Below are positions 640 through 61,687 of a stretch of 64,000 nt of DNA, in pieces. Both the position numbers and the translations under genes were made by a program. Source of the DNA: Scyliorhinus canicula (Eukaryota); NCBI RefSeq assembly GCF_902713615.1, contig NC_052169.1, forward strand, positions 4,924,285 to 4,988,284, given 5' to 3'. The notes under the pieces were generated by a model. That model had not been told where the DNA came from, did not search any database, and saw only the letters and a program-made list of their open reading frames with translations. Numbering within the stretch: position 1 is the first letter of the stretch; each line of letters opens with the position of its first letter.

Positions 640-1075
640 AGTTAGGATGCCCCCCCCCCCCCCCCACCAAGCCTGGGCGGTAGGCCCAGGCCTCCCGGTT
701 GCCATGGTGCCCCAGGTTCTGCCTTCACCTGTAGGCCGCTGCGCTTGTTCCAGCCGAAGATGCTGCCCGGGTATCCGCTCAGCGCCAGCAGCAGCTCGTG
801 GATCATCTCCGCGGCCCCAGTTGGCGGCGGCAGCCGCCGGTCCCCCCTCCACAAACGGAACAACAACAGCACCCGGCGGCCCCCATTTACCGCCCAGACA
901 GCCGATCGACGCTCGCCGCCATGTTTGAGACTGGCAGCCAACGGATCGGATCGGCAGCGCGGGCGGGCCGCCGCCATATTTTCTCCTGGCGGAGGGCGCC
1001 GCCATCTTTGGCGCTGGCACAAACTCGCTCCCCGATCTGAGGCCGCCGCCATCTTTCTTGCTGGCCCAATGCACA
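640..1075. promoter_or_regulatory. CpG-island promoter/5' UTR of TUBGCP4 with four YY1-type motifs (CGCCATnTT)
   Basis: Very GC- and CpG-rich. GCCGCCATGTT ~915-925, CCGCCATATT 971-980, CGCCATCTT ~1000-1008 and GCCGCCATCTT ~1045-1055. Confidence 0.75.
729..806 (-). CDS. TUBGCP4: Gamma-tubulin complex component 4, first coding exon (26 aa, MIHELLLALSGYPGSIFGWNKRSGLQ); the gene continues beyond the left edge of the window
   Basis: The peptide matches the recalled GCP4 N-terminus (MIHELLLALSGYPGSIFTWNKRSGLQ). ATG at 806, phase-0 donor CAG|GTGAAG at 729/728, inside a CpG island. Confidence 0.95.
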
Positions 1076-1548: not shown

Positions 1549-2958
1549 AGAGGAGCAGAATTAGGCCCATTGAGACTGCTCCGCCGTTCAATCATGGCTG
1601 ATATTTTTCTCATTCCCATTCTCCTGCCTTCTCCCCATAACCCCTGATCCCCTTATTAATCAAGAACCTATCTATCTCTGTCTTAAAGACACTCAGTGAT
1701 TTGGCCTTCACAAACTACTGCGGCAAAGAGTTCCACAGATTCACCACCCTCTGGCTGAAACATTTCCTCCTCATCTCTGTTTTAAATCATTGTCCCTTTA
1801 GTCTGAGGTTGTGTCCTCTGGTTCTAGTTTTTCCTACAAGTGGAAACATCTTCTCCACGTCCACTCTATCCAGGCCTCGCAGTGTCCTGTAAGTTTCAAT
1901 GCGATGCCCCCTCATCCTTCTAAACTCCAACGAGTACAGGCCCAGAGTCCTCAACCGTTCCTCATACGACAAGCTCTTCATTCCAGGGATCATTCTTGTG
2001 AACCTCCTCTGGACCCTTTCCAAGGCCCAGCACATCCTTCCTTAGATACGGGGCCCAAAACTGCTCACAATACTCCAAATGGGGTCTGACCAGAGCCTAA
2101 TACAGCCTCAGAATTATATCCCTGGTCCCTTTTGACATGAATGCGAACATTGCATTTGCCTTCCTAACTGCCGACTGAACTTGCACGTTAACCTTAAGAG
2201 AATCGCGAACAAGGACTCCCAAGTCCCTTTGTGCCTCTGATTTCCTAAGCATTTCCCCATTTAGAAAATAGTCTATGCGTCCATTCCTCCTTCCAAAATG
2301 CATAACCTCACACTTTTCCACATTGTACCACTTCTTTGCCCACTCTCCTAGCCTGTCCAAGTCTTTCTGCAGCCCGCCTGCTTCGTCAATACTATCTGTC
2401 CCTCTACAGATCTTTGTATCATCTGCAAACTTAGCAACAGTACCTTCAGTTCCTTCTTCCAGATCATTAATGTGTATTGTGAAAAGTTGTGGTCCCAGCA
2501 CACTCCCCTGAGGCACACCACTAGTCGCTGGCTGCACCCTGAAAAAGACCCCTTTATCCACACTCTCTGCCTTCTACCAGTCAGCCAATCCTCTATCTAT
2601 GCCAGGATCCTACCCTAAACACCGTGGGCTCTTAACTTATTTCACAGCCTCCTCTGCGGTACCTTGTCAAAGGCCTTCTGGAAATCTCCTTCGTCTAACT
2701 TCCTTGTTACCTCCAAAAAGAACTCTAACAGATTGTCAGACATGACCTCTCCTTGACAAATCCTTGCTGACTCAGTCCTATTTTATCATGCACTTCCAAG
2801 TACTCCGTGATATAATCTTTAATAACCGACTCTAAAATCTTACCAATGACCGAAGTCAGGCTAACCGGCCTATAATTTCCCATCTTCTGCCTCCCTTCCT
2901 TCTTAAACAGTGGTGTTACATTAGCCACTTTCCACTCTGGGACCCTTCCTGCCTCCAG
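1549..2958 (-). mobile_element. CR1 LINE 3' fragment (degenerate RT + 3' tail)
   Basis: GNYRPVSLTS, SGVPQGSVLGP, FADDTK and [12 protein letters not shown] motifs; CR1 3' hairpin tail at ~1550. Confidence 0.92.
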
Positions 2959-2964
2959 AAGAAA

Positions 2965-4200
2965 TAAGGCAGGATCTGGCCAAGGTAGACTGGGAAGGGG
3001 CGCAGTGGTTAGCACTGGGACTGCGGCGCTGAGGATCCGGGTTCGAATCCCGGCCCTGGGTCACTGTCCGTGTGTAGTTTGCACATTATACCTGTGTCTG
3101 CGTGGGTTTCACCCCCACAACCCAAAGATGTGCTGGTTAGGTGGATTGGCCATTCTAAATTGCCCCTTAATTGGAAAAGAAAAAATAATTGGCTACTCTA
3201 AATTTATATTAAAAAAAGGTAGACTGGGAAAAGTCACTTGTGGGCAAACCTGTAGAAGAGCAGTGGGGGGGCGTTCAAAAAGGAAATGGGGAGGCTACAG
3301 GCCCAACATGTTGCCTCTCGGGTAATAAGGGAAGGAGTAACAAACCCAGAGAACCATGGATAACCAGAAATATTCAGGATACGATGAGAAGGAAAAGAGA
3401 GGCTTTTAGCAAGTTCAAGGAGAGCAAATCATCTGAGGCATTAGTGGAGCACAAAGTGCCGGATGGAGCTTAAGAAAGGGGTTAAACAAATACTTCACAT
3501 TGGCCTTCACCGAAGAGAAGGAGGATGCAGGTAGGGACTTAGGGAAAGAGACTGTGAGGTTCTTGAGAACATTGACTGAGAGAGTGACAAGGTATTGGAG
3601 GTGTTGGCAGGCTTATAAGTGGACACATGGATGAATTGTGTCCCAGGGAGGTGGGAAATGAAGACATAGATTACAAAAGCAGGGAGGTCACCTTGGAGTT
3701 GTATAGAACTTTGGCGAGGCCACAGCTGGAGTACTGTGTGCAGTTGTGGTCACCACATTATAGGAAGGATGTGATTGCACTGGAAGGGGTGCAGAGGCGA
3801 TTCACCAGGATGTTGCCTGTGATGGAGCATTTAAGTTATGAAGAGAGGTAATAGGCTTGGGTTGTTTTCGCTGGAGCAGAGAAGACTGAGGGGCGACCTG
3901 ATCGAGGGGGACAAGTTTATGAGGGGCATGGACAGGGTGGATAGGGAACAGCTGTTCCCCTTAGTTGAAGGGTCGGTTACGAAGGGACACAAGTTCAAGG
4001 GGAGGGGCAGGAGGTTTAGACGGGGATGTGAGGATAAATGATTTTAATCAGAGGGGGGTGAGGGTCTAGAACGCGCTGCCTGGGAGGGTGGTAGAGGCGG
4101 GCTGCCTCACATCCTTTAAAAAGTACCCGGATGAGCAATTGGCAACGTCTTAACATTCAAGGCTATGGGCCAAGTGCTGGCAAATGGGATTAGGTAGGTA
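2965..4200 (+). mobile_element. Second, decayed CR1 LINE fragment (interrupted by a SINE)
   Basis: [24 protein letters not shown] and RRLRGDLIE motifs. Confidence 0.88.
2997..3215 (+). mobile_element. Short HE1-type tRNA SINE without a LINE tail, 15-bp TSD (relatives at 10595-10803, 25470-25694, 27634-27861, 41560-41786, 42010-42246, 62490-62618)
   Basis: A/B boxes (GTGGTTAG, GGTTCGAATCC); TSD AAGGTAGACTGGGAA at 2982-2996 and 3216-3230. Confidence 0.9.
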
Positions 4201-4509
4201 CACGCCAGGTGTCTTTCATGTGTCGATGGGCCAAAGGGCCTGATGTGCACCGTACCTTTCAGTGATGCTGTGATGGACTGCAGCGGTTCAAGAAGTCAGC
4301 TCCCCTCCACCTTCTCGAGGGATGGGCAACAAAGGCTGGCCTCGCCAGCGATGCCCACAAGCCCGTGAAAGAGTAGAAGCAATGTAAGTGGGCGTGTGAA
4401 TTGAATGGTACTGCTTGCGACTTGACAATACATTTTCTAACAACAAACGTGTTCTTTTTTTTATTTCTTTATGTTAAGAGGACAGAAAATATGATATTGA
4501 ATATTCTAT

Positions 4510-6312
4510 TTATCTACTATTATTTTGGTGCTCGGGTTTTGGTTTAGAGTTGGATTTTTCTGGCTTCTGTATGAACTTGCACTGGAGCTTGCTTCTGCAG
4601 CATGCGGAACTTTCCAGAGCTTCAGAGGGCTTCGCCACCTCATTCCATATTCCTGTTTTTGTTTCTAGTAGGTAGGCATTTTTGTTGACGGAATATTCCT
4701 TCACGTTGCCATCGTCTGTGGCAGATGTTCCCCCGCAGACGAATACCATATCTCTGATTAGGCACATGGCGTGGCACACCTCCAGTTTGGTGGCATTGGG
4801 GAGCAAGGGGACCCGCTTGGCTGTTTTGTTCGCCTTGAAGTTCAGCAAGCCGACCTCGATGGTGTGCTTGTGACTTTGCACGCTGAGGGTCGTGTCCCCT
4901 TGGAAGGAAACGACTGGCCTGTGTTTGAACTCAATGGGGAAGGTCAGGCTTTGCTTCACCTCTCCTGTTATGGTGTCGAAACAGTCCACCACCCCCACCC
5001 TGGAGATCCGGTCATTAATCATGCACCTCCCCGTCGCCACGTAGATGTATCTGTCCCCTTTGGTCACGACCTCGGCACAGTCCATGGGAACACTCATCCT
5101 CCCCACCGAAGTCCATTTCTCCTTCTTCTCGTCGTACCGGTAAATAGTGGAGATGTACTTCCTGGGTGCCACGCTGCCTCCCACCGTGTACACTATCCCG
5201 TTGCACGCTATCATTGAATGGAAGACCAGCCCCAGTGGGAGGTCGGACAGCTTGCTCCAGGTGTTTTTGTCCAGGTCGTACCTCCACGCTGCCTTCAGGC
5301 TGGCATTTTGCTCGTTGGTGCCCCCGGCCACGTACAGGTACTTCCTTGTGCAGATGGCGCCCAGCGCTGCCGCTCGATATGGCATATGAGTGACTTTAAT
5401 CCACTTGTTCTCGTCAATGACATAGGCATAAATTGAGTTGCGGAAGGTGCCATCCGAGCTTTGGCCCCCGAGCACGAGAACCACATCGAGGAGAGCTCCT
5501 TTCCGTTGAAAGTACGCCAGACTGGTTAGATTTTCCTGTTTGCGATGGCTCAGGACGTCCACTATGGCGCACACGCAGGTGGTATTGTTCTTAATGAGCG
5601 ACTCTGTGCTGCTGATCTCTGACAGGATCTCATCAGCTATTCCATTCAAATAAATGTAAGAGAACAGTTTGGGAAAGTAGGACTTCCTGTCTTCTAAATT
5701 ATGGTTCGTCCATCTCAGTATGGTCTGGAGCACCTGATCTTCATTGGCCGAGTGAAGGTCTTCATCTTTGACTAGCTTCAGTAGGACGTGGTATGGGCAA
5801 TCCACAAACTCCTTTGTTTCACTCAGAAGGAAGAACTGGTCCTTGACGTAAGAATACACTGTGGCCGCCAGGTCCGATAGGTCGTAGGTCTCCGCCAGCA
5901 TGAGGGTGTACATATAATTTTGTTTGTCGAGGACAAGCTCCAGATACTCTACGCAATGGGACTTGAGTCGCTTTATCATGAAGTACTTGGCTCCCTTCAA
6001 CAGATCCTCCACATTTTTGTCAGCTATTATAATCTTACCGGTGTAGAAGTACTCCAACAGCTGCTCCACCGACACCGGGCTCATGTAATCAATGTCTATG
6101 GTGACAGACAATTCATCCGAGGGTTGGATGTTGCAGCTGTGGATCAGGTCCTTGACGTAGGGACTGACAGCTGTCAGGATGTTCTGATGGGCGGAGAATG
6201 AATGGGTGCCCACATTGATCACCACGTCACAGCATTCCTTCTTCTGTCTCTGGGAGTTTAGGGATTGTAATATGTAGGTGCTGTGTTTATGGTCGTCAAA
6301 CTCCAGCTTCAT
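4510..6312 (-). CDS. CCIN: Calicin (BTB-BACK-Kelch sperm perinuclear-theca protein), intronless, 600 aa
   Basis: Intact ORF, collinear with recalled mammalian calicin: MKLEF start, QRKGALLD.V..LGGQ, MPYRAAAL, AWRYD.D.N.W.KL.DLP.GLVFH.M, VGGS.APR.Y, ISRVGVVDCFDT.TG, TFPIEF.HRP, EAL...ACC..KL.CK. AATAAA about 45 nt after the stop (~4459-4464). Confidence 0.93.
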   Translation of the reverse strand: MKLEFDDHKHSTYILQSLNSQRQKKECCDVVINVGTHSFSAHQNILTAVSPYVKDLIHSCNIQPSDELSVTIDIDYMSPVSVEQLLEYFYTGKIIIADKNVEDLLKGAKYFMIKRLKSHCVEYLELVLDKQNYMYTLMLAETYDLSDLAATVYSYVKDQFFLLSETKEFVDCPYHVLLKLVKDEDLHSANEDQVLQTILRWTNHNLEDRKSYFPKLFSYIYLNGIADEILSEISSTESLIKNNTTCVCAIVDVLSHRKQENLTSLAYFQRKGALLDVVLVLGGQSSDGTFRNSIYAYVIDENKWIKVTHMPYRAAALGAICTRKYLYVAGGTNEQNASLKAAWRYDLDKNTWSKLSDLPLGLVFHSMIACNGIVYTVGGSVAPRKYISTIYRYDEKKEKWTSVGRMSVPMDCAEVVTKGDRYIYVATGRCMINDRISRVGVVDCFDTITGEVKQSLTFPIEFKHRPVVSFQGDTTLSVQSHKHTIEVGLLNFKANKTAKRVPLLPNATKLEVCHAMCLIRDMVFVCGGTSATDDGNVKEYSVNKNAYLLETKTGIWNEVAKPSEALESSACCRSKLQCKFIQKPEKSNSKPKPEHQNNSR

Positions 6313-6379
6313 TCTGGGAGAGGCAATAACAGCTCTGCAGCTTCTTCAGAGAAGAGCCTCTAAAAGGGGCTTTGTTGTA

Positions 6380-6420
6380 ACCAGGAAGTGACTCAACAAG
6401 AGGAGTTCTGACCTCACAAT
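6380..6420 (-). promoter_or_regulatory. Putative proximal promoter of CCIN: variant CRE (TGACCTCACAAT, 6409-6420) plus adjacent TGAGTCA/CACTTCC
   Basis: Motifs lie 70-110 nt upstream of the ATG. Variant TGACnTCA sites are typical of CREM-tau-driven spermatid promoters. Confidence 0.45.
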
Positions 6421-8645
6421 ACATGTGTGACTCTTACAGTCCTCGTGTATCGAACCTTTGTGATAGACACAGCGGACCATTGAGTAAATTCATAATCTGA
6501 GTCTGGGTTGCCATCTCTGCTGTTGCATTCCCACTGGAAGAGGGAAGCGGCGGAATTCCTCTCTTCCCGAATGACGATTCCATTTCCCTACAGTAAAGTT
6601 CATTTCGATGGGTTCCCAGCTTGGCACAACTTGACAAAGAGTCATCCACACTCGAAACGTCAGCTCCGCTCTCTCTCCACAGATGCTTGTCAGACCTGCT
6701 GAAATTGTCCAGCATTTTCTGTTTGCGTTTCAGATTCACTAAACGTGTATCGAATGGAGTCTTAGGACCAAGATTTTGGTTTAATATGCCCGAGTGGTTA
6801 GGATCTGGATCGCACTCCCTGAGACTGTGGTGGAGGCAGGTTCAATCGAGGCCTTCAAAAGGGAAATGGACGGTTATTTGAAAAGAACCAATCTGCAGGG
6901 TTACGGGGAGAAGGCAGGGGAATGGAACTCGGTGAAATGCTCATTCGGAGAGCTGGTGCAGACATGATGGGCTGAATGGCCTCCTTTGCTGTCACAATTC
7001 TATAATTCTGTGTCTCAGCACCTTGTTGTTTGGCTGCAGCACATCAACGCTTACAGCAATCAAGATAGGCAGCTCAACCATTGTTACCTCCACTGTTTGC
7101 AATGCTTTCTGGGAACCTCATGGAAGAGCAAAGTCACGAACGTGGCAGTCCACTCAAAGGCAGATCTCCCAAGTCGGTGGGCAGAGATATCATCAAGCCA
7201 GAGGCGATCTCATTGATTTGGACACATTCACAGGATGTTGCGACCTGAAGGATTTTCTGCATGGAGGGGAGCCAGAACCAGGTGACACCCAAAGTTCTCC
7301 TTCAAGTATACTTGGAAGTGTGCCTTGGAACATCAATTCCCCAACCCAGGATACACAAGCTGGCAACAGAGGAAAATGATGAAATCACCTGTGGGTGGCC
7401 GGGTGCCACCAAGATGCCCAGTGGTTTCAGCAGTTTGGCAAGGGTGGCACCAACACTGGAAACAACAACCCATAACGAGATCTGACAACTATCTGTCTCT
7501 CTCCCTCTCTCTCATGGATCGATCTCTTGAGCCAACAGCAAAAGTGCACCGCTTGACGATACCTCATCTTCAGCGCATCTACCATCTCACACAGATGGAA
7601 GGATGCCAGCAATGTTCTTTCACTCTAAGGAACTCAAGGGGGATAAGGAATTGGACGTTGCTGCAAGGTTCTAACCCTGCAGCTTAAAGAGCTGGATCAC
7701 CTTCTTCGGGGCAAAGAAAAAGTCCCACTACCTCTGCTGAAGAATGGAAAAGAAATATAGTTGGAATCGTTCATTAGTGGCCCACTGTGACCTTTTTGAA
7801 TTTTTAAGAACTTGTTTAATGGGATGTGGGCATCACTGGCAAGGCCAGCAGTTGTTACCCTTTCTTAATTGCCCTTTAAGTGAATGGCTTCACTTTCAGA
7901 GGGCAGTTAGGCTAATCACATTGAACAAAGAACAAAGGAAAGTACAGCTCAGGAACAGGCCCTTCAGACCTCCAAGCCTGTGCCAATCAAGATACCCTAA
8001 CTAAAACAAAGCCTTCTGCCCTTACTCAGTCCTCTATTTCCTCCCTATTCATGTATCCATCCAGATGCCTCTTAAATGTTGCTAATGTGCCTGCTTCCAC
8101 CACATCCTCTGGCAACGCGTTCCAGGCACCCTCCACTCTCTATGTGAAAATACTTACCCCGCACATCTCCCTTAAACTTTCCCCCTCTTACCGTGAACCT
8201 GTGCCTCCTTGTTATTGACACTTACACCCTTGGAACTATCCACCCTGTCCATGCCTCCCATAATTGTGTAGACCTCTATCAGGTCTCCCCTCAGCCTCCG
8301 TCTTTCCAGTGAAAACAATCCGAGTTTCTTCAACCTCTCCTCATAGCCGTTGATGACCAGGCAACATCCTGGTGAACCTTCTTTGCAGTCTCTCCAAACG
8401 TTCCATCTCCTTCTGATAATGTGGGTCTGGAGTCACATATCAGCCAGACCAGGTAAGGACGGCAGATTTCCTTCCCTAAAGGACTTTAGTAGATTTTATG
8501 ACAATCGATAATGGTTGCCATGGTCACTATTACTGACAGCTAGCTTTATATTCCAGATTTTACTAATTGACTTTAAATTCCACCAGCTGCCGTAGTGGGA
8601 TTTGAACCCGTGTTCCGAGAGCATTGGCCTGGGCCTCTGAATATT

Positions 8646-22332: not shown

Positions 22333-22440
22333 CTACAAGCATTTAAGCAGGAAGAAGTTACAGCCAGAACTCCTGGGGCAGTCGCAGAGTTTTCCAATCC
22401 TGGCACCTTTTCTTACAGCACATTGTTCCCCAACATCACA
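22333..22440 (-). CDS. CARTPT: CART prepropeptide exon 3 ([35 protein letters not shown]); not in the supplied ORF track
   Basis: Hand-translated: six-cysteine CART core, acceptor TGTCTTTTGTCTATTTCCAG, TAG at 22335-22333. AATAAA motifs follow downstream (~22311, ~22240, ~22043). Confidence 0.97.
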
Positions 22441-22751
22441 CTGGAAATAGACAAAAGACAAGCACTTACTGATTAAAGACTTCAATGCGGACGAAAGCCC
22501 CTGTACATAGGATGTTATTACATAAAATTAACGGGGCATTTGATCAAACCACGATGCCACTGCTTCAACATCAACATGTTTGTTCAAAGACTCCAGCAAC
22601 AGAGGTTTGTCAGCTCATAAACCAAATTAATTTCAACAAATTGGAATTCATTTCCAATAAGGTTCAGCTTAAGGCTGGGTACAATTGAGCAGTCACGAGG
22701 CAATAATAACCACAAGTTTGCAAGATGACAACTTGCATTTATATACCACCC

Positions 22752-57538: not shown

Positions 57539-60500
57539 TTCACCCCCTGTTTAAAAAAACACATAGTCCGTCGGGGATGAAGTGTTTTTAAATTATAAGT
57601 TCAGTCTTTGTGGTGGCCTGATAGTCCGTGGTGACTTTTGCCGCTCCAGTGGTGGCACCGTGGATGCGGTCGGTTCCGATGGTGTTCTGTCCGGGAGCAC
57701 GGTTGACTGAAGCTTTGTCCGCCTTGGAGAGGGGGGGTATCAGGAGTGATTAGGGTGGTTGGTGTCGGCTGGGGGGCAGGGGGCGCTATGGAGGGGGCGC
57801 TGTCGAAGTCGGCGTTCGGTGTAGGGCCGGGAGCGTCGGTAGAAGGGGGGGAGGTCGGTGGGAGAGTCGGTGGGAGAGCCAGCGGGTGCCAGGTCTCGCA
57901 GGGATACAGTATCCTGCCTGCCATCGGGGTGCTCGACGTAGGCATAACGAGGGTTTGCGTGCAGCAGGTGGACCCTCTCGACTATTGCATCCGTTTTATG
58001 GCTCCTCACATGCCTCCGGAGTAGGACTGGACCCGGAGTCGTCAGCCAGGGTGGAAGCAAGACTCCAGAGGTGGACTTCCTGGGGAAGACAAACAAACGA
58101 TTGTGAGGGGTCTCGTTCGTGGCCGTACAGAGGAGCGACCGAATGGAGTGCAGGGCATCGGGTAGGACCTCCTGCCAGCGGGCGATAGGGAGACTCCTTG
58201 ACCGTAGGGCTAGGAGGACAGCCTTCCAAACTGTCGCGTTCTCCCTCTCCACTTGCCCGTTTCCCCGCGGGTTATAGCTCGTCGTCCTGTTCGAGGCGAT
58301 GCCCTTGCCGAGCAGGTACCGACGCAGCTCATCGCTCATGAACGATGTACCCCGGTCGCTGTGAATATAAGCGGGGAAACCAAACAGAGTGAAGATGCTG
58401 CGCAGTGCCTTGATCACGGAGGCCGAGGTAGTATCGGGGCAGGGGACAGCAAAAGGGAAGCGGGAAAATTCGTCGATGACGGTGAGGAAATAGATGTTGC
58501 GATTGTTGGAAGGGAGAGGCCCTTTGAAGTCCACGCTTAGTCGCTCAAAGGGCCCAAAGGCTTTTATCAGGCGGGCCTTGTCTGGTCGATAGAACTGTGG
58601 TTTGCATTCCGCACAGATCTGGCATGCCTTAGTCATGGCCTTGACCTCCCCTGTGGAGTAGGGTAAGTTGCAGGACTTGATGAAATGGGCAAGCCGGGTG
58701 ACCCCCGGGTGGCAGAGATCATCGTGGGTGGCTCTCAGGCGGTCCAATTGCGCGTTGGCGCACGTGCCGCGAGACAGGGCATCTGGGGACTCGTTGAGCT
58801 TCCCGGGCGGTATTTAATACCGTACGTATAGGTGGAGAGCTCTATTCTCCACCTCAGAATCTTGTTGTTCTTTATTTTGCCCCGTTGTGCGTTATCGAAC
58901 ATAAAGGCGACCGACCGTTGGTCGGTGATGAGGGTGAACCTCCTACCGGCTAGGTAGTGCCTCCAGTGCCGCACGGCCTCCACTATGGCTTGTGCCTCCT
59001 TCTCGACTGCAGAGTGCCGGATTTCCGAGGCGTTGAGGGTTCGGGAGAAGAACGCTATTGGTCTGCCCGCCTGGTTGAGGGTAGCAGCCAGGGCGACTTT
59101 GGATGCATCGCTTTCTATTTGGAAGGGAATGGCTTCGTCCACCGCATGCATGGCGGCCTTGATGATGCCGGCCTTGATACGGTTGAAAGCCGACTGGGCC
59201 TCATCCGTCAGGGGAAAAACCGTGGTCTTAATGAGTGGCCGGGCTTTGTCCGCATATCTGGGGACCCACTGGGCGTAATAGGAGAAAAGCCCCAAGCATC
59301 GTTTGAGTGCCTTGAGGCTACGGGGGAGGGGGAGTTCCTTAAGGGGACGCATGCGGTCGGGGTACCGGGCCTAGGACCCCGTTCTCCACGACGTAGCCGA
59401 GGATGGCGAGCCGGGTTGTGTGGAACACGGCATTTCTCTTTGTTGTAGGTGAGGTTGAGGGCCCGGGCAGTCTGGAAGGAACTTCCTCAGGTTTGCGTCG
59501 TGGTCCTGCTGGTCATGGCCGCAGATGGTGACGTTGTCCAAGTACGGGAAGGTCGCCCGTAAGCCGTACTGGTCCACCATCTGATCCATCGCCCTCTGGA
59601 AAACGGAGACTCCGTTTGTAACACCAAAGGGTACCCTGAGGAAGTGAAACAGCTGACCGGCTGCTTCAAAAGCCATGTAGGGGCGGTCCTCTGAGCGGAT
59701 AGGGAGTTGGTGGTAGGCCGATTTGAGGTCAACCATGGAGAATACCCGATACTGGGCAATTTGGGTCACCATTTCAGCTATTCGGGGAAGTGGGTACGCA
59801 TCGAGTTGTGTGAAGCGGTTTATTGTCTGGCTATAATCCACAACCACGCGTTGCTTTTCCCCGGAGCGGACTACTAATACCTGGGCCCTCCAGGTGTTGC
59901 TGGCCTCTATGACCCCCTCTTTTAGTAGCCGCTGAACCTCCGACTTGATGAAAGTCAAGTCTTGGGTACTGTACCGGCGACTCTTGGTGGCGACGGGCTT
60001 ACAGTCGGAGTGAGGTTCGCGAAGAGGGAGGGTGGCGCAACTTTGAGTGTCGCCAGGCTGCAGACTGTGAGTGGGGGCAGGGGTCCGCCGAACTTCAGTG
60101 TCAGGCTCCGGTGGCTGCACTGAAAGTCGAGGCCAAGCAGCAGGGGGGCGCAGAGTTGAGGAAAAATGTACAGTTTAAAACGGGAGTATTTCGCGCCTTG
60201 AATTGCGAGGTCAGCGACACAATACCCCGTGATTTCAACCAAATGGAACCCTGAGGCAAGGGCGATAGTTTGGGAGGTGGGATGGGTGCACAGGGAGCAG
60301 CGCCTTACCGTGTCTGGGTGGATAAAGCTCTACGTGCTCCCGGAGTCGAACAGGCAGGGAGTGCCTTGGCCGTTGATTCGCACCCGCATCATCGGGTTTC
60401 GCAGGTGTTTCGGCCGTGATTGATCAAGCGTGATCGCTCCTAGGTGCGGGCCGTCAGAGTCGGACTCACAAAATGGCCGCCCGGAGTCACAAGATGGCCG

Positions 60501-61450
60501 CCGCCGCCGGTCGCACGTGTTGGGTTTTGAAGATGGCCGCCGCTAAGATGGCCGCTCCCATGACTCGCACGGGGTCGATGACGCGTCAGAAGTGGGCGTG
60601 TCTGGCCGCAGTGCAGCCGCGTTGCGGGGTCTGTGAGGCCGCGAGCTTGATTTCTGGGCCTGATGAGGGTTTCGTTTGTGGCCTTTGGGCCCAGCCAGGC
60701 AGACTTTCACGAAGTGCCCTTTCTTCCCGCAGTCGTTGCAGGTCGCGGATCGGGCCCGACAACGCTGACGTGGGTGCTGGCCTTGCCCACAGAAATAGCA
60801 TGGGGAGCCCCCGGAGTGAGTGGATCGACGCGTGGCACAGGCCTATAGCGTGGCCGAGTCTGGAGGGGATCGAGAGGGATTCGTAAGGTCCGCGGTGTAC
60901 GTACGGAGGTTACGGTGGGCCGTTTCGAGAGAAAAGCCGAGCGTTACCGTGCCTTGGAGATCCTTCGCCCCGTCTTCTAGGAGCCGCTGCTGGATGTACG
61001 ATGACCTGATGCCAGACACAAGGGCGTCGCGGATGTGTAAGTCCCTGTGTTCTTCAGCCGTCACTGCTTTGTGGTCGCAGTTCCTCGCGAGCGCGGTGAG
61101 TCTTTCCACGAACTCGTCCAGCGTTTCCCCGGAGCGCTGGCTGCAGGTCGAGAGCAAATGCCTGGCATGTACCTCATTGGTAGTCTTTATGAAACGTTTC
61201 TTCAATATTTCGATCGCGCCTCATAGGTCGTAGCGGTTTCAATCATGGCGGAGATTCGGTGGCTCACCCGGCCATGTAGGAAGCGCAGCTTGCGAGCGCT
61301 GTCGACATCAGACGGTGAGGAGTCCAGATAATTCTCAAAACACCGGAGCCAATGTTTAAAAATTTCCGAGGCTTCAGGTGTCCTGCCTTCCAGGTTGAGT
61401 CTCTCTGGTTTCAGACCGCTGTCCATCTTGATGTGCACTGCTTATTAAAT

Positions 61451-61687
61451 TGAGGCACCCTCAATTACGACGCGAAAGTTAGGTCAGTAATCAAAGGCTT
61501 TAATAAGCAGTGAACAATGGCAGCATCCAAGAGAAGTGTGCTCGCAAAATGGAGTCTCATCTTAAGTACTGTTTCCCAGGGGGCGTAGCCAGAGGCGGAG
61601 TCCCCCAGGGTTCCAAGCCTCTCAAAGGGGCAAGGTATTCCGATCATCACAAGCCTCTTAAAGGGGCAAGGTATTCCGATCATCACA
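61451..61687 (-). repeat. 5' LTR of the Gypsy element (237 bp)
   Basis: Direct repeat of 57302-57538. Contains an ATTAAA poly(A) signal on the sense strand; the gag ATG lies 24 nt downstream. Confidence 0.95.

What the first reader, a model, noticed from the sequence alone, without database searches (positions are those of the whole stretch)
4510..6312. An intact calicin (CCIN) gene in a shark, in a non-mammalian neighbourhood
Seen: an intact, intronless 600-aa ORF matching calicin over its whole length, with a short extra C-terminal tail (KPEKSNSKPKPEHQNNSR). Established: calicin is characterised as a mammalian sperm perinuclear-theca protein shaping the sperm head; human CCIN lies at 9p13, not beside TUBGCP4 (15q15). 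Inference: this sperm-head component dates at least to the jawed-vertebrate ancestor, may be retained preferentially in internal fertilisers, and moved locus in one lineage, plausibly by retroposition.
Basis: partly seen in the sequence, partly recalled or inferred. Interest (0 to 1): 0.7.

Follow-up and report, generated by a model that had tools for sequence, protein, structure and literature searches.

The report
Catshark calicin gene, already annotated
This is a genuine, intact and transcribed shark copy of calicin, a protein that shapes the sperm head in mammals; it is already annotated in public databases for this and many other sharks, so the only modest news is that it sits beside different genes in cartilaginous fishes than in bony vertebrates.

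Summary
Window 4510-6312 (-) is an intact single-exon 600-aa BTB-BACK-Kelch ORF, and it is a true calicin (CCIN) orthologue. Calicin-named proteins match at 42-92% identity, against about 25-30% for the next family. Calicin forms a 100%-supported clade, and the window protein nests among sharks, 97% identical to Scyliorhinus torazame.

It is not new. The window's own protein is already in NCBI/UniRef/nr. Calicin is annotated in 11 other sharks, in rays, a chimaera, coelacanth, sturgeons, amphibians and reptiles.

The gene is under strong purifying selection. It is transcribed as a discrete, abundant mRNA of about 1.9 kb in some samples and is absent in another. Tissue names were not available, so testis enrichment is untested.

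The neighbourhood claim holds and applies to whole classes. Shark, ray and chimaera have CART-CCIN-TUBGCP4. Sturgeon and turtle have CCIN-CLTA, and badger has GLIPR2-CCIN.

Retroposition is not supported. The CDS is single-exon in every lineage checked, so intronlessness predates the split. Differential retention of genome-duplication copies is an untested rival.

The link to internal fertilisation is weak. Sturgeons and paddlefish have the gene, and no bird copy was found.

One added point: all calicins lack the CUL3-binding phi-x-E glutamate, which fits a structural role.

The parts
4510..6312 (-). Calicin (CCIN) coding sequence, a single exon, 600 aa plus stop
4438..6324 (-). Calicin mRNA as seen in transcript contigs: X1 and X2 span 4456-6324 with 0 mismatches; X10 spans 4438-6976
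4460..4465 (-). AATAAA poly(A) signal, about 45 nt after the stop codon and just upstream of the contig ends
5938..6261 (-). BTB domain (aa 18-125)
6124..6132 (-). Degenerate CUL3-contact phi-x-E motif (aa 61-63, N-I-Q); the Glu is absent in all 19 calicins
5617..5910 (-). BACK domain (aa 135-232)
4570..5484 (-). Kelch beta-propeller region (aa 277-581); contains Gly282, which equals human Gly285
4513..4566 (-). Variable C-terminal tail (aa 583-600)
726..806 (-). TUBGCP4 first coding exon, the downstream neighbour on the same strand
22336..22443 (-). CART-family gene, last coding exon (cysteine-rich mature peptide); the upstream neighbour on the same strand
31291..31389 (-). CART-family gene, middle coding exon (approximate ends)
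33000..33106 (-). CART-family gene, first coding exon (approximate ends)

Best explanation
The ORF is the catshark orthologue of calicin (CCIN), a single-exon BTB-BACK-Kelch gene that arose before the last common ancestor of jawed vertebrates. It is functional: it is kept under strong purifying selection and is transcribed as one discrete polyadenylated mRNA of about 1.9 kb in some samples but not others. By homology with mammals, I infer that the protein is a structural scaffold of the spermatid and sperm head cytoskeleton (perinuclear theca and acroplaxome). The BTB-BACK part would self-associate, and the Kelch propeller would bind actin and partner proteins. It is probably not a conventional CUL3 ubiquitin-ligase adaptor, because all calicins have lost the key CUL3-contact residues. 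Shown here: gene identity, intactness, constraint, transcription, neighbours, and loss of the motif. Inferred: the sperm-head role in sharks and the loss of CUL3 binding. The gene lies in a CART-CCIN-TUBGCP4 arrangement shared by sharks, rays and chimaeras. Bony vertebrates have CCIN beside CLTA. The two arrangements therefore separated before the crown groups of both classes. Neither the direction nor the mechanism of that change can be told from these data.
For: Identity: 49 calicin clusters match at 42-92% identity and 459-1284 bits, against 157 bits or less for the next family, KLHL10. An exhaustive scan of 1.84 billion representatives finds calicin as one cluster plus mammalian fragments, then a drop to 248 bits or less. 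The calicin clade has 100/100 support, the cartilaginous-fish subclade 100/100, and the window protein pairs with S. torazame at 100/99 and 97% identity.

Constraint: dN between shark and chimaera is 0.093 with dS saturated. There are 92 invariant columns across 17 species. Gly282 is invariant and equals human Gly285, the site of a homozygous missense variant in a globozoospermia patient (PMC6993856).

Transcription: contigs from two studies span exactly 4456-6324 with 0 mismatches at depths 468 and 275, against about 0-15 in the unique flanks. A third set reaches depth 1872 against a background of about 50. An oligo-dT RNA run has 0 reads on the gene. AATAAA lies at 4465-4460.

Mammalian role: PMC10684152 and PMC12940656.

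CUL3 motif: 71 of 85 other BTB-Kelch proteins and 12 of 12 sister-clade proteins have the phi-x-E Glu; 0 of 19 calicins do. The column of KLHL3 Ala77 is Asp in the shark. KLHL3 E85A and A77E abolish measurable CUL3 binding (PMC3616122).

Synteny: for cartilaginous fishes; for bony vertebrates.
Against: No tissue labels were available, so testis or spermatid expression in the shark is not shown. No shark protein-level or localisation data exist in the searched literature. Loss of CUL3 binding is inferred from sequence alone. BACK-domain and other contacts could still support binding. The shark protein is near-neutral (pI 7.5) whereas mammalian calicin is basic (pI about 8.5), so its properties may differ.
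Confidence: 0.8

Rival explanations
1. The gene moved by retroposition in one lineage. A processed calicin mRNA was reverse-transcribed and inserted either between CART and TUBGCP4 in the cartilaginous-fish stem or beside CLTA in the bony-vertebrate stem, and the source copy was lost.
For: Single-exon CDS. Different flanking genes in the two classes. By my own knowledge, genes expressed in the male germ line are often retrogenes.
Against: The CDS is single-exon in all calicins checked: shark, ray, chimaera, sturgeon, frog, turtle and badger. It is also single-exon in an amphioxus member of the sister clade. Intronlessness therefore predates the split and does not mark a later event. No intron-bearing parent copy exists in any lineage. 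Hallmarks such as target-site duplications or a poly(A) remnant would not survive more than 400 million years. The A-run at the 3' end is simply the AATAAA signal region.
Confidence: 0.2
2. There was no movement. Cartilaginous-fish and bony-vertebrate calicins are reciprocally retained copies (ohnologues) from the two early vertebrate genome duplications. One ancestral CCIN was duplicated with its chromosome. Cartilaginous fishes kept the copy in the 15q15-like segment beside TUBGCP4, and bony vertebrates kept the copy in the 9p13-like segment beside CLTA.
For: By my own knowledge, not tested here, human 9p13 and 15q15-q22 carry many duplicate pairs: TPM2/TPM1, TLN1/TLN2, UNC13B/UNC13C and SHB/SHF. 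Region 5q is a third member: CLTA/CLTB, MAP1A/MAP1B, with CARTPT next to MAP1B. A CART-family gene flanks the shark CCIN. A random relocation would rarely land in a sister segment. Each class has a single, internally uniform arrangement.
Against: No species has two deep calicin paralogues. Both copies would have had to persist from the duplications until the split between cartilaginous and bony fishes. The protein tree cannot tell this from plain orthology. Its root is unstable, and the AU test for bony-vertebrate monophyly gives p = 0.052. The CART-like gene of gar and sturgeon lies beside a CDKN2AIP-type gene, not TUBGCP4, so I could not tie the regions together with data.
Confidence: 0.3
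3. The ORF encodes a conventional CUL3 substrate adaptor of another KLHL/KBTBD subfamily that has merely been labelled calicin-like.
For: The BTB-BACK-Kelch architecture is typical of CUL3 adaptors. The best solved-structure matches are KEAP1, KLHL11 and KBTBD2.
Against: There is a large score gap to every non-calicin protein. The protein nests inside the calicin clade with full support. The phi-x-E Glu and helix residues are lost together with all other calicins.
Confidence: 0.02

Closest known systems
Mammalian calicin (CCIN), perinuclear-theca and calyx protein of sperm
   Same: Orthologous by score gap and tree. Same length and the same BTB-BACK-Kelch layout. Single-exon CDS. 49-50% identity over 97% of the length. 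The disease-linked Gly285 position is conserved. Shares the loss of the CUL3 phi-x-E glutamate.
   Different: Flanked by CART and TUBGCP4 instead of GLIPR2 and CLTA. Near-neutral pI (7.5 against 8.5). Longer, variable C-terminal tail. Role in shark sperm not examined.
Calicin-like proteins annotated in other cartilaginous fishes (Scyliorhinus torazame, Hemiscyllium, Carcharodon, Callorhinchus, Hypanus and others)
   Same: 83-97% identity and the same CART-CCIN-TUBGCP4 order where checked. The window's own protein (P0238) sits in the same 90% cluster and is itself in NCBI/UniRef/nr.
   Different: Five residues longer at the C-terminus than most shark copies (600 against 595 aa). Pristiophorus is also 600 aa.
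Invertebrate deuterostome 'KLHL11-like' BTB-Kelch proteins (amphioxus, hemichordates)
   Same: Sister clade of calicin (SH-aLRT 99). Similar length. The amphioxus gene also has a single-exon CDS.
   Different: Only about 29-30% identity, separated by a stem of about 1 substitution per site. They keep the phi-x-E CUL3 motif. They are not specifically orthologous to calicin.
CUL3 substrate adaptors KEAP1, KLHL3 and KLHL11
   Same: Same domain architecture; best solved-structure sequence matches.
   Different: Calicins lack the Glu of the CUL3-contact motif and carry Asp/Asn/Ser-type residues where KLHL3 has Ala77. The KLHL3 mutations E85A and A77E abolish CUL3 binding.

Membership tests
Calicin (CCIN) orthologue group | Best matches are calicins, with a clear gap to other BTB-Kelch families | tested here: met
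   42-92% identity and 459-1284 bits to calicins, against 157 bits or less and 248 bits or less for anything else.
Calicin (CCIN) orthologue group | Falls inside a supported calicin clade in a BTB-Kelch tree | tested here: met
   Calicin clade 100 (117-row tree) and 100/100 (40-row careful tree). The window nests among sharks.
Calicin (CCIN) orthologue group | BTB-BACK-Kelch layout of about 590 aa, aligned colinearly over the full length | tested here: met
Calicin (CCIN) orthologue group | Conserved position next to CLTA/GLIPR2, as in mammals | tested here: not met
   The shark, ray and chimaera gene lies between CART and TUBGCP4. Bony vertebrates have CLTA, GLIPR2 or NANS as neighbours. This weakens positional orthology and leaves hidden paralogy open.
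Calicin (CCIN) orthologue group | Testis or spermatid-specific expression and localisation to the sperm perinuclear theca | not testable with these tools
   Abundant, sample-specific mRNA is shown, but tissue labels are hidden. No shark protein data were found.
CUL3-RING ligase substrate adaptors (BTB-Kelch) | phi-x-E motif and conserved helix alpha3 residues of the BTB domain that contact CUL3 | tested here: not met
   0 of 19 calicins have the Glu, against 71 of 85 other BTB-Kelch proteins and 12 of 12 sister-clade proteins. The Ala77-equivalent is Asp in the shark. The benchmark mutations are in PMC3616122.
Processed retrogene (lineage-specific) | Intronless copy alongside, or derived from, an intron-bearing parent; poly(A) remnant and target-site duplications | tested here: not met
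   All calicins are single-exon. No parent copy exists. There is no hallmark beyond the normal AATAAA region. The age makes hallmarks unrecoverable, so an ancient event is not excluded.

The most novel reading that the evidence does not exclude
The calicins of cartilaginous fishes and of bony vertebrates are not strict orthologues. They are reciprocally retained copies from the early vertebrate genome duplications, lying in sister chromosome segments (15q15-like and 9p13-like). Under this reading calicin had already become a non-CUL3 structural sperm-head protein before the jawed-vertebrate ancestor and was later lost independently in several lineages where no copy was found (teleosts, gars, bichirs, birds).
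Probability: 0.25. Interest if true: 0.45.

Novelty: already known. Interest (0 to 1): 0.25.

Why it matters
Sperm biologists treat calicin and the perinuclear theca as mammalian topics. In the library I searched, no paper pairs calicin with sharks, none on the protein pairs it with teleosts, and the few that mention reptiles do not examine a non-mammalian calicin. Genome annotations nevertheless already show the gene across jawed vertebrates. This follow-up adds three modest points. First, the gene is highly constrained and actively transcribed in a shark. Second, there is a clean class-level difference in its neighbours: CART-CCIN-TUBGCP4 against CCIN-CLTA. Third, all calicins share loss of the residues that let BTB-Kelch proteins dock on CUL3, which dates the switch towards a structural role to before the jawed-vertebrate ancestor. 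None of this overturns current views. It mainly offers sharks and sturgeons as comparative models for how the sperm head skeleton evolved.

Tried and rejected
1. Tissue identity of the expressing samples. Testis enrichment remains untested.

2. The 21 extra letters at the 5' end of the X1 transcript contig. They have no match in the window with up to 2 mismatches, and there is no AG acceptor at 6325/6326. They remain unexplained: an allele, a distant leader exon or an artefact.

3. Polarising the locus change with an outgroup. The amphioxus relative has no called neighbours within 10 kb and is not specifically calicin's orthologue. No cyclostome calicin was found.

4. Testing whether CART-TUBGCP4 adjacency exists without CCIN in bony fishes. 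The closest CART-like genes of gar and sturgeon are followed by an XTBD/CARF (CDKN2AIP-type) gene instead, and no such gene is in the shark window. The coelacanth protein was not on record. Result: inconclusive.

5. Literature support for 9p13/15q paralogy. Two searches gave nothing usable, so that argument rests on my own knowledge. One loosely framed literature search returned only irrelevant papers.

6. Unnamed calicin-like fragments (P0056, P0067, P0083, P0100) as possible teleost, bird or lamprey copies. All are closest to mammalian calicins.

7. The 457-aa ORF at 33713-35086. It has no Pfam hit and overlaps CA-rich microsatellites from 34129 on. I read it as a repeat artefact.

8. The bacterial-type promoter scan is not applicable to this genome.

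Full report
**Observation**

Window 4510-6312 on the minus strand is an ATG-initiated ORF of 600 codons with no interruption. It is the longest ORF in the 64-kb window. The next largest are a 457-aa ORF that overlaps microsatellite sequence and retrotransposon ORFs. Pfam finds a BTB domain at residues 18-125, a BACK domain at 135-232 and Kelch repeats from about 277 to 564. The closest solved structures by sequence are KEAP1, KLHL11 and KBTBD2.

**Identity**

I searched about 5.8 billion protein clusters. The search returned 49 clusters named calicin or calicin-like, or clearly belonging with them.
- Sharks, rays and a chimaera match at 83-92% identity.
- Coelacanth matches at 59%, a caecilian at 54% and sturgeon at 52%.
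- Reptiles, amphibians, a monotreme, a marsupial and placental mammals match at 42-50%.
- All of these score 459-1284 bits. The next family, KLHL10, scores 157 bits at 25% identity.

An exhaustive HMMER scan of 1.84 billion cluster representatives shows calicin as a single 50%-identity cluster plus a few fragments. All of those fragments proved closest to mammalian calicins. Scores then drop to 248 bits or less.

Two trees agree.
- In a 117-protein maximum-likelihood tree, calicin is monophyletic (SH-aLRT 100) on a long stem of about 0.96 substitutions per site.
- In a more careful 40-protein tree (LG+C20 PMSF), the calicin clade has 100/100 support and the cartilaginous-fish subclade 100/100.
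- In that tree the window protein pairs with the Scyliorhinus torazame calicin-like protein at 100/99 support and 97% identity.

This fits earlier notes of this scan that the genome is catshark-like.

**Not a new discovery**

The exact 600-aa protein of this window (P0238) is already held by NCBI, UniRef and nr. Its 90% cluster also holds calicin or calicin-like entries from Hemiscyllium, two Chiloscyllium species, S. torazame, Carcharodon, Rhincodon, Cetorhinus, Stegostoma, Heptranchias and Heterodontus.

The sturgeon record carries an 'UNVERIFIED_CONTAM' label but is genuine. Paddlefish, sterlet and beluga have the same protein, and the sturgeon locus has a vertebrate neighbour.

In the paper library, no paper pairs calicin with sharks, none about the protein pairs it with teleosts, and the few that also mention reptiles do not examine a non-mammalian calicin. 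Knowledge of the gene outside mammals exists as annotation only.

**Is it functional?**

- Constraint. The 17-species alignment is colinear from Met1 to the last Kelch blade, with 92 invariant columns. Between shark and chimaera dN is 0.093 while dS is saturated, which indicates strong purifying selection.
- A disease-linked site. Human Gly285 carries a homozygous missense variant in a globozoospermia patient (PMC6993856). It corresponds to shark Gly282 and is invariant in all 17 calicins.
- Transcription in some samples. Contig sets from two different studies (X1, X2) each contain one contig that spans exactly 4456-6324 with zero mismatches. Their depths are 468 and 275, while the unique flanks read about 0-15. 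A third set (X10) has a contig over 4438-6976 at depth 1872 against a background of about 50.
- No transcription in another sample. An oligo-dT RNA run of the same species label (X18, 1.5 billion letters read) has no read on the gene. Another run from study P1 holds almost none of the gene's sampled words.
- 3' end. An AATAAA lies at 4465-4460, just upstream of the contig ends.

The gene therefore makes a discrete, abundant, sample-specific mRNA of about 1.9 kb.

**Neighbourhood**

On the minus strand the window reads as follows.
- A CART-family gene comes first, with exons near 33.0-33.1, 31.3-31.4 and 22.3-22.4 kb (Pfam CART E = 1.8e-19).
- CCIN follows at 6312 down to 4510.
- The first coding exon of TUBGCP4 lies at 806 down to 726. 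It matches residues 1-27 of human GCP4 with E = 3e-11.

Other cartilaginous fishes agree. The full order CART-CCIN-GCP (GCP of 663-667 aa) is annotated in the elephant shark and the Atlantic stingray, and the CCIN-GCP part in the epaulette shark. The arrangement therefore goes back to the crown of cartilaginous fishes.

Bony vertebrates differ.
- Sturgeon has CCIN followed by a clathrin-light-chain gene.
- A turtle has NANS-CCIN-CLTA.
- A badger has GLIPR2-CCIN.

This matches the human 9p13 order as I know it.

**How did the difference arise?**

In every annotated calicin I looked up, the gene span equals three times the protein length plus a stop codon. This holds for the sharks, ray, chimaera, sturgeon, frog, turtle and badger. 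It also holds for the amphioxus member of the sister clade. A single-exon CDS is therefore ancestral and carries no information about a later move. No intron-bearing parent copy exists anywhere.

I rate a rival at least as likely. From my own knowledge, human 9p13 and 15q15-q22 are sister segments from the early vertebrate genome duplications. Examples are TPM2/TPM1, TLN1/TLN2, UNC13B/UNC13C and SHB/SHF. Region 5q is a further sister, with CLTA/CLTB, MAP1A/MAP1B and CARTPT beside MAP1B. If that is right, the two classes may simply have kept different duplicates of one ancestral CCIN.

I could not test this rival.
- Literature searches for the paralogy gave nothing usable.
- The closest CART-like genes of gar and sturgeon sit beside a CDKN2AIP-type gene rather than TUBGCP4.
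- No cyclostome calicin exists in the databases to serve as an outgroup.
- The protein tree cannot discriminate. Its root falls between tetrapods and a group made of coelacanth, chondrosteans and cartilaginous fishes. This is most likely a rate artefact on a very long stem. The species-tree arrangement is borderline but not rejected (AU p = 0.052).

**Distribution and the internal-fertiliser idea**

Calicin was found in sharks, rays, a chimaera, coelacanth, sturgeons and paddlefish, in frogs (Ascaphus, Discoglossus), salamanders and a caecilian, in turtles, a crocodile and squamates, and in all three mammal groups.

None was found from teleosts, gar, bichir or reedfish, birds or cyclostomes. 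Proteins from gar, bichir, reedfish, teleosts and birds are in the same database, because they turned up in the CART search.

By my own knowledge, sturgeons, paddlefish and Discoglossus fertilise externally, and birds fertilise internally. The proposed link is therefore weak. 'Not found' in proteomes is not proof of loss.

**Mechanism**

In mammals calicin is a testis-specific, actin-binding scaffold of the perinuclear theca and calyx. It links acrosome, theca and nuclear envelope and is needed for head shaping (PMC10684152, PMC12940656).

Most BTB-Kelch proteins are CUL3 adaptors, so I compared the CUL3-contact segment of the BTB domain.
- 71 of 85 other BTB-Kelch proteins, and all 12 sister-clade proteins, have the Glu of the phi-x-E motif.
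- None of the 19 calicins has it. The shark reads N-I-Q-P and mammals read D-M-K-T.
- The two conserved Phe residues of the preceding helix are replaced.
- The column of KLHL3 Ala77 is Asp in the shark.
- All calicins have a three-residue insertion after the motif.

In KLHL3, the mutations E85A and A77E each abolish measurable CUL3 binding (PMC3616122). I infer that calicin gave up canonical CUL3 docking on its long stem branch, before the jawed-vertebrate ancestor. This is consistent with a structural role. It is a sequence-based inference, not a binding measurement.

**Verdict**

- The orthology and the neighbourhood difference are correct.
- The gene is old, constrained and expressed.
- It is already annotated for this very genome and many relatives.
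- The retroposition and internal-fertiliser ideas are not supported by what could be tested.
- Interest is low to moderate.

Noticed in passing
window 57740-60120 (-), extending to about 61.5 kb: Gypsy-type retrotransposon pol ORFs (reverse transcriptase, RNase H, integrase), split over three ORFs. Another first-stage note (s1-231807) concerns its primer-binding site at 61426-61516.
   Followed up: partly
window 28852-30763 and 34129-35938: A 32-bp minisatellite of about 61 copies lies inside the CART intron, and CA-rich microsatellites lie upstream of CART exon 1. They explain the strong GC/AT skew there. The 457-aa ORF at 33713-35086, which has no Pfam hit and overlaps the CA-rich array, is read as a repeat artefact.
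   Followed up: yes
window 2894-3287: A very high-copy, transcribed repeat lies between CCIN and TUBGCP4, with summed contig depth up to about 380,000. Read ends show a GGCACAGTGGTTAGCA...TGCTGCC consensus, which looks like a tRNA-derived SINE.
   Followed up: no
window 6324/6325: Transcript contigs from two studies stop exactly at 6324, 12 nt before the ATG. One carries 21 further letters that occur nowhere in the window, and there is no AG acceptor at that point. A third contig runs colinear with the genome to 6976. This could be an alternative leader, an allele or an assembly artefact.
   Followed up: partly
Hypanus sabinus calicin locus (no DNA held): The stingray annotation has an antisense 514-aa gene model with weak TPR hits that spans both CART and CCIN and starts head-to-head with TUBGCP4. 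It is not called in the elephant shark or the epaulette shark.
   Followed up: no
L005:10001-11761 (Branchiostoma floridae): Amphioxus has a 586-aa BTB-Kelch gene with a single-exon CDS that annotators name inconsistently (KLHL17, KLHL11 or KLHL20). With hemichordate 'KLHL11-like' proteins it forms the sister clade of vertebrate calicin and keeps the CUL3 phi-x-E motif.
   Followed up: partly
L006 and L008 (gar and sturgeon CART-like loci): In both species the CART-like gene closest to the shark's flanking CART is followed, about 8.5 kb away and convergently, by an XTBD/CARF (CDKN2AIP-type) gene. This is a conserved ray-finned-fish adjacency that is absent from the shark window.
   Followed up: partly
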